Assembly (NCBI GenBank): GCA_000388065.2 | Contig: KB932205.1 | Length of the DNA stretch: 24,920 nt | Source: Fonticula alba ATCC 38817 | Lineage: Eukaryota; Protista; Nucleariida | Direction: 5' to 3' (one strand) | Shown: piece after piece, positions 1 to 23,628 of the stretch | Layout: each line of letters starts with the position of its first letter | Numbering within the stretch: position 1 is the stretch's first letter | Notes under the pieces: generated by a model | What the model saw: the letters and a program-made list of their open reading frames with translations, nothing else | Told to the model about the DNA's origin: nothing | The model's database searches: none | Position numbers and translations under genes: made by a program

Positions 1-469
1 CCCCCCCCCCCCCCCCGGGGGGGGCGGCCGGGGCGGAGGGCATCTGGCCGCGGCACGACCGCGGCAAGGTCCCGACACTGGTTCGTGTACGCGTGGGTTG
101 AGGCTCCCCACACAACGGACGGGAAGGAACCAGAGAGTTCCCCCTCCCAGCAAGTCAGCCAACCAACAAGCACTCCAATCGCAGCATGCCCCATTTTTCG
201 GCCAGCCCGACCTGCGCCCCCCCGGAAGCCCGCGCCCACCAACCCGCAATCTCCCCCCCCCCTTCCTCTTCTATTCCCTCCCCTCTCCCCCCCTACCCCC
301 TCCCCTTTGTGCAGATCCCCGGATCGCCCCTTCCCCTTCCCGCCACCTGCGCCCATCGCGCGACCTCCCGAGGGAGTCTCCTTTCTAGTTTTTCTTCCCC
401 CCCCCCCTCTCCCTGCCGAGCTTGGCCCTGATCGCCCTCACCGCCCTCTGAGAGGAACCATTACCCACC

Positions 470-3400
470 ATGGTCCGCGACAAGAAGTCGTCCAAGGGAC
501 GTCTTGACAAATATCCTTGTTATGTGCATCTGTCCCCCCNNNNNNNNNNNNNNNNNNNNNNNNNNNNNNNNNNNNNNNNNNNNNNNNNNNNNNNNNNNNN
601 NNNNNNNNNNNNNNNNNNNNNNNNNNNNNNNNNNNNNNNNNNNNNNNNNNNNNNNNNNNNNCCCTTTCCTGCTGCCCGAGGTTGACCATGTCACCGGTCC
701 GCGTGCGCCCTCTACATTCGGGCGAGCCCGGGCCCGCGACATGGCCCCCTCCGGGAGCTGGCATTCCCCCTTCCTCCCCCTCTCTCTGCTTGTTTGTGTG
801 CTCCCCCTCCCCAACTTGCCCTTCTGAGTTTCAAACGGTGTCTCCTTAACCTTCAGCCCCCCCCCCCCCCCCGGTCCCCCGGTCCCCTTTTCGATTTCTG
901 TCTTTCCCCTGGCGTGCCTAATCTCGCACGTTCTACCGCCTGGCCAAGGAGCAGGGCTACCGTGCCCGTTCGGCTTTCAAGCTGGTGCAGCTGAACAAGA
1001 AGTACAACTTCCTGGCCCGGACGCGTGTGCTCATCGATCTGTGTGCCGCCCCTGGTGGTTGGTTGCAGGTGGCTGCCAAGAGCATGCCCATGTCCTCGCT
1101 GATCATCGGTGTGGATCTGGAGCCCATCAAGCCGGTGGCCTCGAATGTCATCACCATGGTCAATGACATTACCACGGAGAAGTGTCGCCAGGACCTGCGC
1201 GGCCACCTCCACACTCGCAAGGCCGACGTGTGCGTGCTCCCTTTGCCTCGGCCCCTCTCGGCCCCTGCTTTTCTGTCGCCCCACATTTGTCCGGGTCATT
1301 TCCGCCCGGTGGCCAGGCCCCTGTCTTGTCTAATCCATGCTTGCGTCCATCCACCCGGACACACACACACACACACACACATAGCGTCTTGCACGATGGT
1401 GCCCCGAACATGGGTCAGGCTTGGGAGCAGGACGCGTACACCCAGGCGGACCTGGTGCTGAAGTCCCTGCGCCTGGCCACGGAGTTCCTGGTGGAGAATG
1501 GTGTGTTCGTCACCAAGGTCTTCCGGTCGAAGGACTACAACAAGCTGCTTTTCGTCTTCAATCAGCTCTTCCGTCGCGTCGAGGTGACCAAGCCCACCTC
1601 TTCCCGGTGCGTGTGCCCTCCTCTGGGCTTCCATGCTCACTTGCTGCTGCTGCTCTCTCTCTCTCTCTCTGTCTCTCCCACCGACGCCCTCCTGCCTGCT
1701 CTACTCTACCTTTCCTCCTCCTCCATCTCCCGCCATTTGTTTCTTTCCCTTCCCCTCTTTCCCCCCCCCCCCCCCCCCCCGCCGCCGTCCATGTGCCCTG
1801 ACTCCTGCCTCCACGCCGTGCAGTAATGTGTCGGCTGAGATTTTCGTCGTCTGCATCGGGTATCTGGATCCGAAGAATCTGGATCCCAAGCTGCTGGACT
1901 CGAAGTATGTCTTCAGCGAGGTCGACGACGGGGCCAAGTCCCTGACCGTCCGTGACCTGATGAAGCCCTCGCGCAAGCGCCACCGTGATGGCTACGAGGA
2001 TGGCAATGTCACCCTGTTCAAGACGACCACGGCGGCGGATTTCATCGAAGCCGAGAACCCGGCCAACGTGCTGGGCACTTACAACGCCCTGACCTTCGAG
2101 GATGACAAGTCCAAGTCCTTCCTGGAGGGTATCACCGGGACCCTGCTGACCGACATTGTGGAGTCTTGCAAGGATCTCAAGATCCTCGGACCGCGCGACT
2201 TTGCCCGGCTGCTGCGCTGGCGTACCAACATCCATCGTGAGCGTGAGCGTGTGGCTCGCGAGGCCGCCGCTGCCGAGAAGGCCGCCCAGGAGCCCGAGGG
2301 CGTTGTCGAGATCACCGAGGAGAACCTGGATGAGGAGGTACGGCGCGTCAAGTTGACTGGTTGGGGGTGGGGGGAGGGGGGGGGGGGGGGGGGGGTTTGT
2401 GAGCCTGCTGTTGGGGCCTCCCCCATCTTCTTTGTTTTGCCCCCTCTCTCTGCCTACGTGGTTTTCCGTTTCCTTCTCTGACCCCCTCTCTCTCTCTCTC
2501 TCTCCACACACACACACAGCTCGCCAAGGTCGAGGCCAGCGTCCAGGCGGCCGACAAGCGCCGGCGTAAGCAGCTGCGTCTGCTGCGCGTCAAGCTCCAG
2601 AGCCGTATCCGCCAGCTGGCCATGCAGAGTGAGACCGGCGAGGCCATGGATGAGACGCTCTTCTCACTGCGCGAGCTGAGCAAGAAGTACTCGGACCTGG
2701 CGGCACACTTCGCCGAGGGTGGCGAGGGCATCGTCCTGAAGTCCTCCCAGCACGGTGAGGATCTCTTCCTCGGCTCGGACGCCGAAGAGGAGCTGGAGGA
2801 GGATGATGACGATGGCGAGGTCGATGCGTCGGACATCGACGGCTCCGACGCCGAGGCGGCCGGTCCCGACTCCGACACCGAGGAGGCCCACGCCAACTAC
2901 TACGGCGAGCACACCGACAAGGACACCTACCTGGCCATGATCGAGTCCAACATGCACGACGAGTGCGTGTCCATGCGATGCTGCTCTTGCTCATGCGCCC
3001 TCGCTCCTTGTGCTGCTCCCTTTCTCCTGCCCTCATACTGACTGTGCATTCCCCCCCCCCCCCCCCCCCCCCCCCCTCCCCCCCCGCCCCAGATCTCGGC
3101 CCCGCCCCCCCCCCCGGCCCGCCCCTGCGTTGGCCTTCGCTTCCGCTCGAATTAGCTACATCTCCTACCTGGAGTCGCGCAACAAGACGGCCCTTCTGCG
3201 CAAGATGGCCAAGATCGAGGCGTCGAAGAAGCGCAGCCGCGATCCGGCCCAGCAGGAGGAGGATGCCGACTCCGATGAGGACCCGGTTCACCGGGCCACC
3301 CGGCACCGCCATCAGGCGACCGGGGACCATGATGAGGGCGATATGGATGCCGGCGCGTCCGAGGCCCTTCCCCCCTCGCAGCGGGCGTCCATCTGGTTCA

Positions 3401-4684
3401 GCAACCCCCTGTTCAAGAATGTCCTCGGCGACACGGTGACCAGCGCCCAGCTGGACATCGCGGATGAGGATGACTCCAGCGAGATTGCCGATGAGATTGA
3501 GGCCATCCAGAAGATGAAGCGCGAGTACACCAAGGCCAAGGGTCGCGCGGCCCTGGCCGCCGGCTCCGGGGCCGGGTCCCGCAAGGTGGTCGGCCGCATT
3601 GTGGACGACGATTCGGATGACGAGTCGGACCATGCGGACTCCGAGGAGGATGCCCACTCGTCGGGTGACGAGGGTGCCCATGATTATGACGATGATGAGG
3701 ACCTCTCGGACATGGACTCCGACGATCTGGCCGACCTGGAGGAGGGTCTCGGGTCGGATGCCGAGGATGAGGATGGCTTCGAGATTGACCGGCAGGATGA
3801 CACCAGTGGGGATTTCTCGGCCATGAAGAAGCGCGCCCTGGATCCGGCGCAGATCACCCTGGCCAGCCGGCTCCGGTCGAAGATCCACCGCGAGGCGGAG
3901 ATCGATGCCTCGTACAACCGCTACGCCTTCGACGATGACAGTGCTCGCGGGGAGCTGCCTTCCTGGTTCGCTGATGATGAGGGTCGTCACAACCGGCCGG
4001 AGATGCCCATCACCAAGGAGGCCGTGGCCCTGCATCGTGAGCAGCAGCGCGCGGTCGATGCCCGGCCCATCAAGAAGATCCTCGAGGCCCAGGGCCGGAA
4101 GAAGGTCCGCGCCACCCGGCGCGCCGAGCGCATTCGCCAGAAGGCCGAGGCCATCATCAACGAGGGCGACCTGTCGGAGAAGGCCAAGCACAAGCAGATT
4201 CTCGGCCTTTACCGCGCCAAGATCAAGAAGGTGCGTCGTCGCAAGGGGAGAGGGCCGCGCGCGCGCGCGCGCGCGCGAGAGAGAGAGATGCCCTGTCATA
4301 TGTCGTTTTTGCCTGTTTGCTGGTTCCCTGTTTTTTTTTCTTTGCGCCTCCCTCACTCCCCCAGACTACTGACTGCCCCTGCTGCGATCGACTTCTCGTC
4401 GAATGGATATATACCCTGCTCCGCACCTACCCGCTTCGTCTCTCTCTCTCTCTCTTTCCCTCGTGCACACAACAGAAGGAGGAGGTTACCTACGTGCCGG
4501 CCATCGGCTCGAACAAGGGCATCCGCACCCGCCCGCGTGGTGTTACTGGTCGCTACAAGGTGCGTGCTTGCTCTTGCTGCCCGGATATCAACTTGCCCGT
4601 TCTCTGTTGCCTTGATTTCCCGAGACCCTCCTGCCTCCTTTTCTGCCAGCTGACCCTCCCCTTCTCTCCCCTCCCCGCCCCCTC

Positions 4685-4722
<38 letters not shown>

Positions 4723-4806
4723 TGTGCCCAAACACAGCTGGTCGATACCCGCATGAAGAAGGACATGCGTGCGCGCAAGGCCCGGGAGCGCCGCGCTCGC
4801 AAGTAA
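470..4806 (+). CDS. SPB1: 27S pre-rRNA (guanosine-2'-O)-methyltransferase Spb1/FTSJ3. Exons 470-510, 930-1229, 1385-1606, 1824-2337, 2520-2962, 3156-4230, 4476-4559, 4738-4806 (2748 nt, 915 aa).
   Basis: The spliced translation starts [39 protein letters not shown]. It has the SAM-binding motif DLCAAPGGW and an intact RrmJ K-D-K-E tetrad (AFK, LHDGAPN, VTKVFRS, SAEIF). It continues with [11 protein letters not shown], an acidic middle region and a Spb1-type C-terminus (YNRYAFDD...LPSWFADDE...RPIKKILEA). All intron phases match and the total length is divisible by 3. Confidence 0.96.
511..929 (+). other. U12-type (minor spliceosome) AT-AC intron, SPB1 intron 1
   Basis: The 5' end is ATATCCTT (511-518) and the 3' end is CGCAC (AC at 928-929). 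Removing it joins AA|G into Lys and restores the conserved [14 protein letters not shown]. Branch-site candidates are TCCTTAAC (843-850) and TGCCTAAT (915-922). The intron contains an N-gap (540-661). Confidence 0.9.
540..661. other. Assembly gap (122 N). Other gaps are 10 N each at 7257-7266, 17121-17130 and 23587-23596.
   Basis: Runs of N, each flanked by homopolymer or microsatellite sequence. Confidence 1.
1359..1380 (+). repeat. (AC)n microsatellite directly before the 3' splice site of SPB1 intron 2
   Basis: (AC)11 followed by ATAG. Similar tracts occur at 2505-2518, 4687-4719, 5933-5988 (minus-strand sense), 13791-13819 and 23597-23612. Confidence 0.9.
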
Positions 4807-5963: not shown

Positions 5964-8264
5964 GCGTGTGCGTGTGCGTGTGCGTGTGCAGGGAGGGGGG
6001 CGGGGGGAGCGGAGGGCGCCCATGCGATCAAAGAAGGTGAGCAAGGCACGCACCTGAGACAGGCGGTATTGTGTCTCCCGGCGGACAAATGATCCAACAG
6101 AGTAGCGGAAGCGCCGGGAAAAGCGCAGCAGGCGAGCCACGGCGCGAGCTGGCAACGACCAGGAATTCGGAGCGATTGACCGAACGGGCGGCGGAGGGGT
6201 CACTGATGGGGCAATCGGCTCGAAGACCACGCTCATCTGGCTGACAATGAAGTGGTTCTATGGACGACCGAGGCCATGGTGGGAGGCATACAGGTTAGAC
6301 GGTCGGAATGGGAGGGGGGGGGGGCGAGAGGGTGAAAAAGCAAAAAAAAAAAGGAGAGAAAAAGGGAAGGGCGACAGGGGGCGCGGGAAGAACGAACCAC
6401 ATTGAAAAGCTCAGACAGCCGGGTCGAGGGCAAGTCACCGCTGTGGAGGCGCAAAGTGAAACCCGACAGGGGCAGAGTAAGCACCAAGCTTCGGGAGGAC
6501 ATCAGGCGAAGAGGGAAAGCAAAGGCCGAGGAGGAAACGCACAAGTCCGAGTCCAGCGGCAGGGTCGGCCCGCCGGGCAGGGGAGCCGGGGTTGGCGTGG
6601 CCGCGGCAAACAAGCTGGCCAGCCAGGACCAGGACAGCGTGCCATCGGTGTTGGTAAAGCCACTTCGCAGAAGCGGGTCCTGGTATTCCAGCGACGATGG
6701 CGACGGCGCCGGCGGCGACGACGGCGCCAGGGGGATGGAGCGCGGCGGGGCCGCTGACGCCAGTAGATTCCCCGACGAGGAGTCTGACAGAGACCCGCCA
6801 GCCGGGGCCGGGCCGGTTGGCGCCGTCGCCGAGGTCGAGGAGGACCGCCCCCGACGGGAGACCGGCGTGCCAGATGCACCAGCCTGAGTGGCCGCGCCGC
6901 CGGCCTGGGCACTGGTCCCACCGGCACTGGTCCCAGCCAGGGGCATGGTTGACAGGAGGGACTCCGGGGAAATGGTCGTCCCGCCGGGGCGGCCGGAGCT
7001 CGGCAGCCAGGGGATGTGCTCGCCGTCGGCCGTGCGTGCCAGCACCGGCGTCGGGGAAATGAGCCCCGGCGTGGCACACGCCGCACAGGCCGCCGACCAG
7101 ATGATCTATGAGCAGTGATGTCAGCGCCAGCAAGGCAGATCACCGTGCACGGGGCAGATGGGCGAAGGAGCAAGGGAGTGAGGAAGCAGGAGAAGGGGGC
7201 CCTCCAGGAAACCGGCAGGGAGAGGGAGAGGGAGAGAGAGGGAGGGAGAGAGAGAGNNNNNNNNNNCCGGCAGGGAGAGGGAGAGGGAGAGAGAGGGAGG
7301 AGGGGGGGGGGGGGAGAGGGGGGAGGGGGAGAGAGAGAGAGAGGGGGAGAGAGGGGGGGGGAGGAGGAGAAGGGGGGAGGGAGAGGGAGGGAGAGAGAGG
7401 GAGGGAGAGGGAGAGAGGGAGAGAGGGAGAGAGGGAGAGAGAGAGGGAGAGAGAGGGAGGGAGAGGGAGAGAGGGAGAGAGGGAGAGAGGGAGAGAGAGA
7501 CGCACGGCATTCGGCGCGGTCAGGTAGTTGAGCACCAGGCCATCAGTCACGCGGATGTTGAGCACCCGGCCCGAGCGCTCGAAGGCCTCCATGAAAGTGA
7601 TGTCCTCGATCCAGGCCTGCGGGCAGACCCGAGTCAGAGGGTCGGGGTGAGGGCAATTGCGTGCTTCGGTCGCGTGCGACGCCTCCTCGGTGTCCAGAGA
7701 CCGGATGGTGCACCCGCACCGGACCGACTGGTATTGCGATGAGCCGGACAGCAAATTGGCCACCATGTGCGTGGTGAAGCTGGACGCCGGGGGAGACCCC
7801 CCATGGACAGATGCGCCGGCGACCATGGGGGCCTGTTGGAAGCTGACCCGCAGTTTGGCCCGCACAAAGCGCCGCAAGACCGCCGCATCGAAGAAGACCC
7901 CATGCTGGATGAAGCGATCAAAGCGCCGGCGCAGCGAGGCCGATGAGGAGGAGAATCCCTCGACGGGAGCGTCGCCAGTATCTATGCCGGTGTCAGCAGA
8001 CGCCGGGCACTTGGAGAATGGAGAGGCACAAACGGCGCGGCCATGGGCGTACCAGAGGGAGTGTTGTGCTGATAGAAGATGGAGAAGTCCAATGTCTGGT
8101 CGCCGGTGGTGAAGAACTCCCGAAGCTCGGCCTGGTGGCGGGGTGAAGAAAGCGAGAAGGGGGGAGACCCCGAGGAGGAGAGACAGCAGGGTGAGGAGGA
8201 GGCAGGTGTGCCTGGGAGCAGGCCACAATCAATGAAACACAACAGCAACGACAGCTCCCGCCCG

Positions 8265-17090: not shown

Positions 17091-18356
17091 GGGCGAGAGG
17101 CCACCAGAGGAATGGGCCGGNNNNNNNNNNGGGCCAGGCGCGCTCCCTCCTCCTCCTCCTCCTCCTCTCCCTCCTGCTGCTGCTCCTCTTTTTGTCTCGC
17201 CTCCTGCCCCCCCCCCCCATTCCTCTCGGCCTCCTGTTGGCCATTCCTCCTTCTCGGATCCCTTGGCTTTCTTTTCTCCGTGCCGTCCTTCTTGCGCCGC
17301 GGATCGTTTGCCTGTCCCCCGGGTGTCGAAAAGATCAAGTGTCGGCAACCCACCCCCTGTGTTTCTCCTGCTCCTGCTCCTGCTCCGGGCCAGGACCTCA
17401 CCCCTTCATAGCAATATAGACAACCCCACCAAAAGATGCGGCGCGGCAGGCGTCCATGGGCAGCCGGGGCTCGGCCGGCTTGTGTATACGTCGGGGGGCC
17501 AGTGGAAGCAAAAGGGGGCTGGCTCGCATGAGACCACCTTGAAGAGAGCAGGCCACCCAGTGTGCTGGCACAGCTCCGCGGCGGGCGTCCCGCCCCCCAG
17601 GCACCGAAGCGGGGCCGATCGAGGGCCGATCAACCTCCTGTGTTAACTGGTGTCATTAACTCGATCGGCGAGGATGAACATCATTCTCTCTGTCTCAGTT
17701 GCAGGAGTTCTCTGTCCATCGCGTTGCCGTGCGCGCCGACCGCAAATGTTCTGTTGCTGGTGTATGCGCGCGTTCGCGCCTGCCATTCTTCTCCCCTCGG
17801 TCCCCCGGCCGCCCTGTGTCCCTCTCCCCCGGGTCGGTGTTCCGCGGGCGGAGCAGTGAAAGGCGGCCGCCGGCGGAAACGCAGCAAATGTTGGCTGGGG
17901 GTTGAAAAAAACGTTCCCCCTCCCGCGAATGCAGTTGGCGCGCCGTTCGCCATAGAGGGGCAAACAGCCGGGCGCGTGTTGATGGGGCAACACGGCGGGG
18001 GCGGGGCCCTCTGGGGGGCAGCACCGCCCAGTCAACAGCCGACCTGAGGAAAGCCAAGGCGCCCACTCTGAAGACGGCCCCGGGCGCGGGGCTCAGTGCC
18101 CGGCCTGGGATTCACCACTCTTCTCCCCCCCCCCCCGTTCTTCTTCTCCACCCCATCCCCGACACGCGCGCCTCCGTACTTGCCATCTGAGATCTCTCCC
18201 CTGTGCCTCGCCCTCCCTGTCCTTGCCTCCTCCGGCCCCCTTCCGCCTTCTCTCCACCCATCGCACCCTGCTGACACGATCAGCCTCCACCACTCATCGC
18301 ACACGCGCCCCTGTGTACACTCGCGCAGCACGCACACTCCGCTGCGCCAAGAGACG

Positions 18357-23455: not shown

Positions 23456-23628
23456 TGGGCCGCGTGCCACACGCGCGCGCAGCCCCCGGAATAGATCTGA
23501 GCTCGCTTCCGAACGTTCTGAATCCTGGTCAGATCGTGCGCTTTTTGGGCGTGAAAGGAGATCATGCAGCAGGGCTCTCTCTCTCTNNNNNNNNNNACAC
23601 ACACACACACACATATACATATGCACAG

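What the first reader, a model, noticed from the sequence alone, without database searches (positions are those of the whole stretch)
511..929. AT-AC minor-spliceosome (U12) intron gating the SPB1 ribosome-biogenesis gene
Seen: exon 1 ends ...CTTGACAA and is followed by ATATCCTTGT. The conserved coding sequence resumes after ...CTCGCAC as G TTC TAC CGC CTG GCC AAG. The AT...AC excision cleanly restores the conserved [17 protein letters not shown] in frame, and I found no GT-AG pair that does. Established: RTATCCTT is the U11 5' splice-site signature and TCCTTAAC is the U12 branch-site consensus. Inference: this organism keeps a functional minor spliceosome (U11, U12, U4atac, U6atac). The minor spliceosome has been lost repeatedly in fungi and protists, so a clear case in a possibly fungal-sister protist would be informative. 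Standard gene predictors would mis-annotate this N-terminus. All other introns I resolved in the window are GT-AG.
Basis: partly seen in the sequence, partly recalled or inferred. Interest (0 to 1): 0.85.

Follow-up and report, generated by a model that had tools for sequence, protein, structure and literature searches.

The report
Real AT-AC minor intron in SPB1
The amoeba Fonticula alba really does cut a rare "minor-spliceosome" type intron (AT...AC ends) out of its ribosome-biogenesis gene SPB1; it is a known kind of intron and already in the public gene model, but its textbook branch-site motif lies about 80 bases from the intron's end, not the usual 10-20.

Summary
Confirmed. RNA contigs from two samples join window base 510 directly to 930, removing 419 assembled bases with AT..AC ends and no ambiguity. 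The N gap (540-661) lies wholly inside the intron, so it cannot affect frame or junction. DNA contigs did not close it. No GT/GC-AG pair keeps the frame.

The window is Fonticula alba scaffold KB932205.1. An eight-exon model with this intron translates exactly to the public 915-aa protein, so the N-terminus is not mis-annotated.

The donor ATATCCTT is the only RTATCCTT in the window, and TCCTTAAC (843-850) is the only TCCTTRAY. The intron is therefore U12-type by sequence.

The surprise is that the branch motif sits 80-81 nt from the 3' splice site. The published optimum is 11-13 nt, and intronIC scans only -55..-5. The gene's U2-type introns also carry single CTRAY motifs 22-114 nt upstream.

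The intron position is shared by none of 10 sampled orthologs. "Gating" is unsupported. Minor snRNAs and proteins could not be tested here.

The scan had already flagged four other AT-AC introns elsewhere in this genome (PCID2, NASP, CPSF30, PIGB).

The parts
470..4806 (+). SPB1/FTSJ3 gene CDS span (8 exons, 915 aa), Fonticula alba
   Evidence: The eight-exon model translates exactly to public protein P0001. The public gene range is L004 10001-14337, which equals window 470-4806. Pfam domains are FtsJ, DUF3381 and Spb1_C.
470..510 (+). Coding part of exon 1 (ATG at 470; [13 protein letters not shown] + AA of Lys14). Transcript contigs start at 403-415.
   Evidence: RNA contig pieces 415-510 and 403-510.
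511..929 (+). AT-AC intron, 419 nt as assembled (297 known bases plus a 122-N gap of estimated length), phase 2
   Evidence: RNA joint 510->930, AT..AC, both=0, in X1 and X4. No GT/GC-AG alternative exists.
511..518 (+). U12-type 5' splice site ATATCCTT
   Evidence: Only exact RTATCCTT in the window and in locus L004, which adds about 9.5 kb upstream of the window. Consensus RTATCCTTT per PMC1635337.
540..661 (.). Assembly gap (N run) inside the intron, flanked by C homopolymers
   Evidence: DNA contigs end at 539 and resume about 35 nt before 662, so the gap is not bridged.
843..850 (+). TCCTTAAC, consensus U12 branch-site motif. Its branch adenosines A848/A849 lie 81/80 nt from the last intron base.
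   Evidence: Only TCCTTRAY on either strand of the window. The chance of the exact motif in an intron of this size and composition is 0.002-0.005.
854..856 (+). CAG 5-8 nt after the putative branch A; not used as an acceptor
   Evidence: No RNA joint ends here. It is the last AG before the 3' splice site.
857..927 (+). Pyrimidine-rich spacer (38 C, 19 T, 11 G, 3 A) with no AG or AC dinucleotide. It starts with a C16 run.
   Evidence: The homopolymer length is uncertain because DNA contigs break at 872/883.
917..922 (+). CCTAAT, the only CTRAY-type motif in the intron, 8-9 nt from the 3' end. It is the rival, proximal branch-site candidate.
928..929 (+). AC 3' terminal dinucleotide of the intron
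930..1229 (+). Exon 2 (G of Lys14, then [14 protein letters not shown]...; FtsJ methyltransferase domain)
   Evidence: RNA contig pieces 930-1229 with 0 mismatches. Translation.

Best explanation
Window 511-929 is a genuine U12-type (minor-spliceosome) AT-AC intron. It is the first intron of the Fonticula alba SPB1/FTSJ3 rRNA 2'-O-methyltransferase gene, and it interrupts Lys14 in phase 2. Shown: the exact AT..AC excision in mRNA, the perfect U12 donor ATATCCTT, and a perfect U12 branch-site core TCCTTAAC in the same intron. Inferred: the U11/U12 di-snRNP binds the donor and the TCCTTAAC at 843-850, and branching occurs at A848 or A849. The CAG 5-8 nt downstream is too close to be used. The second step then takes the first available AC, 80-81 nt downstream, across a C-rich spacer that has no AG or AC. 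This mirrors the distal branch-site architecture of the gene's U2-type introns, whose single CTRAY motifs lie 22-114 nt from the acceptor. On this reading it is a U12-type intron that breaks the usual rule that the branch site sits 10-20 nt from the 3' splice site. My confidence that it is U12-type is about 0.9. My confidence that the distal TCCTTAAC is the branch site used is about 0.7. The figure in the confidence field is the product of the two.
For: The RNA joint 510->930, AT..AC, both=0, appears in two runs and two samples with no mismatches. The spliced model equals the public protein. No GT/GC-AG solution exists. ATATCCTT is unique in the window and unlike this gene's U2 donors (GTGCGT six times, GTACGG once). 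TCCTTAAC is the only TCCTTRAY in 24.9 kb on both strands. Its expected count in an intron of this size and composition is 0.002-0.005 for the exact motif and 0.02-0.03 for the degenerate form. No consensus U12 branch site lies within the last 55 nt; only CCTAAT does. Bases 857-927 contain no AG or AC. The U2 introns of the same gene each carry one CTRAY, at 22, 38, 51, 84, 103 and 114 nt from the acceptor. Earlier-scan notes, untested here, report more AT-AC U12-like introns, SNRNP35 and 65K genes, and distal branch motifs in this genome.
Against: The branch point was not mapped. The 80-nt spacing contradicts what is known for U12 introns: an optimum of 11-13 nt (PMC3584512), a motif within about 45 nt (bioRxiv 10.1101/2020.10.12.336362), and 9-12 nt even in the transformed Physarum system. 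A CTAAT sits 8 nt from the 3' end. Only one intron was examined. 122 or more bases of the intron are unread. The C16 run length is uncertain.
Confidence: 0.63

Rival explanations
1. The intron is U12-type, but it branches at the proximal degenerate site (CCTAAT 917-922, A920/A921, 8-9 nt from the 3' end). The distal TCCTTAAC would then be a chance or vestigial motif.
For: The proximal position is near the canonical U12 spacing (PMC3584512). CTAAT is the only CTRAY in the intron. A weak hairpin (911-917 paired with 926-932) would present CUAAUCUC in its loop.
Against: CCTAAT lacks one T of the CCTTAAY core and would pair poorly with a canonical U12 branch-site-binding sequence (established U12/BPS pairing; inference). 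A distance of 8-9 nt is below the 11-13 nt optimum. An exact TCCTTAAC arising by chance in this intron has an expected count of 0.002-0.005. The fold is not significant (z = -1.75).
Confidence: 0.22
2. It is a U2-type (major-spliceosome) AT-AC intron that uses the CTAAT branch site and the C-rich tract like its neighbours.
For: A pyrimidine tract and a CTRAY motif are present, as in the gene's U2 introns. U2-dependent AT-AC introns exist (PMC1557818). An earlier-scan note, untested here, reports an ATACGT-type AT-AC intron in this genome.
Against: U2-type AT-AC donors resemble the U2 consensus apart from the first base (PMC1557818). Here positions +4 to +6 are TCC, against CGT or CGG in all seven U2 donors of the gene. 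The donor is instead a perfect 8/8 match to the U12 consensus, and a perfect U12 branch-site core co-occurs in the intron. A CTAAT 8 nt from the acceptor is also much closer than any CTRAY in the gene's U2 introns (22-114 nt).
Confidence: 0.07
3. It is an artefact: either a false junction from RT template switching or contig mis-assembly, or the gap hides extra exons or a mis-join.
For: The RNA evidence consists of assembled contigs at low depth (3-5x), and the gap is unresolved.
Against: The same junction appears in two runs from two samples. There is no microhomology (both=0), which template switching needs. It has perfect splice motifs at both ends, and it restores a universally conserved N-terminus with no residue missing relative to orthologs. 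All other introns of the gene are removed in the same contigs.
Confidence: 0.02

Closest known systems
Canonical U12-type AT-AC introns of animals and plants (as catalogued in U12DB, SpliceRack and IAOD)
   Same: AT-AC termini, the /ATATCCTT donor and a TCCTTAAC branch-site core. The host gene has an 'information-processing' function. The intron is not in phase 0.
   Different: The consensus branch-site motif lies 80-81 nt from the 3' splice site, against an optimum of 11-13 nt (PMC3584512). It is outside intronIC's -55..-5 scan window (PMC7367187). It is followed by a long C-rich pyrimidine tract, which canonical U12 introns lack. The position is not shared with any sampled ortholog.
Transformed minor-intron system of Physarum polycephalum (bioRxiv 10.1101/2020.10.12.336362)
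   Same: A protist lineage in which one hallmark of U12 introns has drifted while the RTATCCTT-type donor is kept.
   Different: In Physarum the branch-site sequence changed (to TTTGA, with a compensating U12 snRNA change), but the 9-12 nt spacing is kept. Here the sequence is canonical and the spacing is what deviates.
U2-type introns with distant branch points and long AG-exclusion zones (for example alpha-tropomyosin, cited in PMC1557818; my own knowledge for the AG-exclusion-zone concept)
   Same: The branch motif sits at the 5' edge of an AG-free pyrimidine-rich zone tens of nt long, and the first downstream acceptor is used. The same layout is seen in this gene's seven U2 introns.
   Different: Those introns are spliced by the major spliceosome with U2AF and polypyrimidine-tract recognition. 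This intron carries minor-spliceosome donor and branch motifs and an AC acceptor.
U2-dependent (type II) AT-AC introns (PMC1557818)
   Same: AT-AC termini.
   Different: Their donors match the U2 consensus after the first base. This donor matches the U12 consensus and not the local U2 consensus GTGCGT.

Membership tests
U12-type (minor-spliceosome) intron | Extended 5' splice site RTATCCTT(T) at the intron start | tested here: met
   ATATCCTT lies at 511-518, exactly at the RNA-verified junction, and is unique in the window.
U12-type (minor-spliceosome) intron | AT-AC (or GT-AG) termini actually used in mRNA | tested here: met
   Joint 510->930, AT..AC, both=0, in two RNA runs.
U12-type (minor-spliceosome) intron | Branch-site motif TTCCTTRAY present in the intron | tested here: met
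   cTCCTTAAC at 842-850 matches the core 8/8 and the 9-mer 8/9. It is the only TCCTTRAY in the window, and the chance expectation for the exact core in this intron is 0.002-0.005.
U12-type (minor-spliceosome) intron | Branch site close to the 3' splice site (optimum 11-13 nt; within about 45-55 nt in all detection schemes) | tested here: not met
   A848/A849 lie 81/80 nt from base 929. Within the last 55 nt only CCTAAT is found, 8-9 nt from the end (PMC3584512, PMC7367187).
U12-type (minor-spliceosome) intron | No distinct polypyrimidine tract upstream of the 3' splice site | tested here: inconclusive
   Bases 857-927 are 80% pyrimidine and include a C16 run. All introns of this gene are about 69% pyrimidine, so the tract may simply reflect composition.
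U12-type (minor-spliceosome) intron | Excision depends on U11, U12, U4atac and U6atac snRNPs | not testable with these tools
   This needs snRNA depletion or blocking, or cross-linking.
U12-type (minor-spliceosome) intron | The genome encodes the minor snRNAs and U11/U12-specific proteins | not tested
Unchecked earlier-scan notes report SNRNP35 and 65K genes.
U2-type AT-AC intron | Donor matches the U2-type consensus apart from A at +1 | tested here: not met
   The donor is ATATCC, against the local U2 donors GTGCGT (six) and GTACGG (one). Positions +4 to +6 all differ.
SPB1/FTSJ3 rRNA 2'-O-methyltransferase (host gene) | FtsJ methyltransferase domain, DUF3381 and Spb1_C domains, and the conserved N-terminus KGRLDK-FY-LAKE-GYRARS | tested here: met
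   Precomputed Pfam domains PF01728, PF11861 and PF07780 on P0001, with 68-79% identity of residues 1-230 to the 119 best orthologs listed, mostly fungal SPB1. N-terminal sequences are shown.

The most novel reading that the evidence does not exclude
In Fonticula alba the minor spliceosome has lost the branch-site-to-3'-splice-site proximity rule. Its U12-type introns would then generally branch at a canonical TCCTTAAC tens of nucleotides upstream and reach the acceptor across a long AG/AC-free pyrimidine tract, as the organism's major introns do. That would imply altered 3'-splice-site recognition in a minor spliceosome. It would also mean that standard classifiers, which look only at the last 45-55 nt, under-score minor introns in this lineage.
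Probability: 0.4. Interest if true: 0.65.

Novelty: new variant of a known kind. Interest (0 to 1): 0.45.

Why it matters
The intron gives transcript-level evidence that minor-type (U12-like) splicing is active in Fonticula alba, a member of the sister lineage of Fungi. No paper in the searchable library mentions minor introns for this organism. On its own that adds one more lineage to a known distribution, and the gene model is already public.

The part that could matter to splicing specialists is the 3' architecture. A short, fixed branch-to-acceptor distance is treated as a hallmark and a mechanistic constraint of U12 splicing, and it is built into every detection tool. An intron with perfect U12 donor and branch motifs but about 80 nt of spacing, in a genome whose major introns also use distal branch motifs, makes a direct question testable: is that constraint intrinsic to the minor spliceosome, or can it evolve?

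It also warns that intronIC-type surveys may undercount minor introns in this lineage.

Tried and rejected
1. Closing the gap. DNA contigs of the source organism and of three metagenomes were laid on 350-1300. Contigs stop at 539 and resume just before 662, and they also break at the C16 run (872/883). The gap was not closed.

2. GT/GC-AG alternatives. All donor and acceptor pairs were enumerated, and none keeps the frame. Two other excisions (512-930 and 513-931) give the same protein but a different mRNA (AAA instead of AAG). The zero-mismatch contig pieces ending at 510 and starting at 930 exclude them.

3. Other U12-like introns in the window. Of the 22 one-mismatch matches to RTATCCTT, I looked at the four that keep the ATATC start; two were read in context (9464 and 12148) and neither lies at a plausible exon boundary. 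The other two (4403 and 20468) and the rest were not examined individually.

4. Minor snRNAs. Rfam found nothing in the window or in 10 kb upstream.

5. RNA structure that might bring the distal branch site close to the acceptor. No significant fold was found (z = -1.75).

6. Orthologous intron. Ten orthologs were examined: fish, spider, Rhizophagus, Phycomyces, Basidiobolus, Phlyctochytrium, Phytophthora, the green alga Symbiochloris and two unnamed close relatives. None has an intron at Lys14 phase 2.

7. Literature on Fonticula minor introns or on FTSJ3 as a minor-intron gene. Nothing was found.

8. Splicing to the CAG at 856 (AT-AG). There is no RNA support.

9. Retrieving the other Fonticula AT-AC introns (PCID2, NASP, CPSF30, PIGB) to test whether the spacing is general.
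Full report
**What is there**

Reading the window shows an ATG at 470. It is followed by 41 coding bases that end ...CTTGACAA at 510, then ATATCCTTGT. Further on comes a run of 122 N (540-661), then ...TCTCCTTAACCTTCAG at 841-856. After that lies a C-rich stretch that ends ...GCCTAATCTCGCAC at 929, followed by GTTCTACCGCCTGGCCAAG.

**Is the junction real?**

Four small RNA-derived runs from 2012 hold 86% of the sampled words of the gene's long exon.

Their contigs were laid on 300-2600. In two runs from two samples (X1, X4) they show a joint from 510 to 930: 'skips 419, ends AT..AC, both = 0'. The contigs have 96 and 108 nt on the 5' side and 300 and 170 nt on the 3' side, with no mismatches. 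RNA depth across 531-915 is zero.

The same contigs also skip 1230-1384 and 1607-1823 (the latter as an explicit GT..AG joint). They end at 2337 with a loose end that matches base 2520 onwards. They therefore come from cDNA, not from contaminating DNA.

I enumerated every GT or GC donor in 473-538 against every AG acceptor in 663-944. No pair keeps the frame into the conserved [11 protein letters not shown]. Two shifted excisions give the same protein but an AAA Lys codon instead of AAG. The zero-mismatch contig pieces exclude them.

**The gap**

The N run lies wholly inside the excised segment, so it cannot affect the reading frame or the junction. Both flanks are present in one mRNA, in the expected order and strand.

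I could not close the gap. Logan DNA contigs of the source organism stop at 539 and restart about 35 nt before 662. They break again at the C16 run (872/883). The true intron length and the exact homopolymer length therefore remain unknown. The distance from 843 to 929 could be off by a few bases, but not by tens.

**Organism and annotation**

A homology search returned a 915-aa protein at 100% identity, named 'methyltransferase [Fonticula alba]', with FtsJ, DUF3381 and Spb1_C domains. Its encoding record is GCA_000388065.2 scaffold KB932205.1, and the gene range equals window 470-4806.

My eight-exon model has intron 1 = 511-929 (AT-AC) and seven GT-AG introns. It translates to exactly that protein.

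Fonticula alba is an opisthokont of the order Rotosphaerida.

**Which spliceosome?**

The U12 consensus is RTATCCTTT at the donor and TTCCTTRAY at the branch site (PMC1635337). According to PMC3584512, the donor and the branch site are the defining features of the class, not the terminal dinucleotides.

- ATATCCTT at 511 is the only exact RTATCCTT on either strand of the window (0.26 expected). It is also the only one in locus L004, which adds about 9.5 kb upstream of the window.
- It is unlike the gene's seven U2-type donors, which are GTGCGT six times and GTACGG once. This argues against a U2-type AT-AC intron, whose donor should match the U2 consensus after the first base (PMC1557818).
- TCCTTAAC at 843-850 is the only TCCTTRAY in the window on either strand. 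In an intron of this size and composition, the expected number of exact matches is 0.002-0.005, and 0.02-0.03 for the degenerate form.

The co-occurrence of both motifs in an RNA-verified AT-AC intron makes a U12-type assignment about 90% likely in my judgement.

I could not verify the machinery. Rfam finds no snRNA in the window or in 10 kb upstream, and the rest of the genome was out of reach. Earlier notes of this scan, which I did not test, report four further AT-AC U12-like introns (PCID2, NASP, CPSF30, PIGB) and SNRNP35 and 65K genes elsewhere in this genome.

**The unexpected feature**

The branch adenosines of TCCTTAAC (A848/A849) lie 81/80 nt from the last intron base. Published values are much shorter:

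- The U12 optimum is 11-13 nt, and U12 introns are said to lack a polypyrimidine tract (PMC3584512).
- The motif is described as lying within about 45 nt of the acceptor. Even the transformed Physarum system keeps a 9-12 nt spacing (bioRxiv 10.1101/2020.10.12.336362).
- intronIC scores only positions -55 to -5 (PMC7367187).

In this intron the last 55 nt contain no consensus motif. The only candidate is CCTAAT at 917-922, 8-9 nt from the end.

Directly after TCCTTAAC comes a CAG (854-856), 5-8 nt from the branch A. It is not used. The following 71 nt (38 C, 19 T, 11 G, 3 A) contain no AG and no AC until the AC that is used. No significant RNA fold shortens the distance (z = -1.75).

The gene's U2-type introns have a similar layout. 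Six of the seven carry exactly one CTRAY motif each, mostly CTGAC, at 22, 38, 51, 84, 103 and 114 nt from the acceptor, followed by C-rich or CA/CT-repeat tracts. Two untested earlier notes describe distal branch motifs elsewhere in this genome.

The most economical reading is that Fonticula's minor spliceosome, like its major one, can branch far upstream and use the first suitably distant acceptor. I put about 0.7 on the distal site being used, about 0.2 on the proximal CCTAAT, and the rest on other possibilities, including a site hidden in the gap. Only one intron was available, so I cannot say whether this is general.

**Age of the intron**

I mapped the N-terminal gene structure of ten orthologs from their genomic loci.

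| Ortholog | First intron near the N-terminus |
|---|---|
| Fish and spider FTSJ3 | GT-AG, phase 1, in the Gly of ETG\|YR (26 nt downstream of the Fonticula site) |
| Rhizophagus and Phycomyces | GT-AG, phase 1, in the Gly of KG\|RLDK (13 nt upstream) |
| Green alga Symbiochloris | GT-AG, phase 2, in the Gly of EQG\|Y |
| Phlyctochytrium, Basidiobolus, Phytophthora | None in this region |
| Two closest unnamed relatives (78-79% identity) | None in this region |

. None has an intron at Lys14 phase 2. There is therefore no evidence that this is an ancient conserved minor intron. This contrasts with the PIGB intron of the same genome, which an earlier agent described as conserved (untested here). 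It may be a lineage-specific gain, or a survivor lost everywhere else that I sampled.

**Claims not supported**

'Gating' of SPB1 expression has no evidence. Only the spliced form is seen, in low-depth contigs that cannot show retention.

No paper in the searchable library mentions Fonticula together with U12 or minor introns, or FTSJ3 as a minor-intron gene. The large survey PMC10639083 may include the genome in data I could not read.

**Verdict**

- The U12-type interpretation is well supported by sequence and RNA evidence, but not by direct evidence for the machinery.
- The gene model is already public.
- This scan has flagged sibling introns on other scaffolds of the same genome.
- The new element is the roughly 80-nt spacing between a perfect U12 branch motif and the acceptor. 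It makes this a variant of a known kind and gives a concrete, cheap test: a genome-wide spacing census plus lariat mapping.

Noticed in passing
window 1230-4737 (SPB1 introns 2-7): All seven U2-type introns have GTGCGT (six) or GTACGG (one) donors. Six of the seven carry a single CTRAY motif (mostly CTGAC) 22-114 nt upstream of the acceptor, followed by C-rich tracts. Distal branch sites seem to be the norm in this gene.
   Followed up: partly
window 1363-1380, 2488-2518, 4688-4720: (CA)n and (CT)n microsatellites sit directly upstream of several 3' splice sites, ending in the acceptor CAG/TAG.
   Followed up: no
window 662-1700 (runs X29-X35): Soil and sediment metagenome DNA runs from 2022-2025 hold 13-69% of the sampled words. 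Their contigs match SPB1 exon 2 with 0-1 differences, so Fonticula alba or a near-identical strain occurs in environmental samples.
   Followed up: partly
window 539/662, 872/883; also 7257-7266, 17121-17130, 23587-23596: Short-read contigs break at every long C/G homopolymer. The 122-N gap is flanked by C runs, and three further 10-N gaps lie elsewhere in the window.
   Followed up: partly
L005:3001-4908 and L006:1273-3228: The nearest relatives of the Fonticula SPB1 methyltransferase domain (78-79% identity) are two unnamed eukaryotic contigs, one from an ENA metagenome (KANT15-1) and one from Logan SRR32944840. Both read through the Lys14 site without an intron. Their organisms are unknown.
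   Followed up: partly
L001, L003, L007, L008, L010 (orthologous SPB1/FTSJ3 loci): The first 25 codons of SPB1/FTSJ3 carry introns at four different nearby positions in different lineages: Gly10 phase 1, Lys14 phase 2, Gly23 phase 1 and Gly23 phase 2. Later positions (about codon 58-60 phase 2, 74-76 phase 1) are shared by animals and Mucoromycota or Glomeromycota but are absent in Fonticula.
   Followed up: partly
window 403-470: RNA contigs start at 403-415, which gives a 5' UTR of at least about 55-67 nt for SPB1. It is preceded by a C/T-rich promoter region with long C runs.
   Followed up: no
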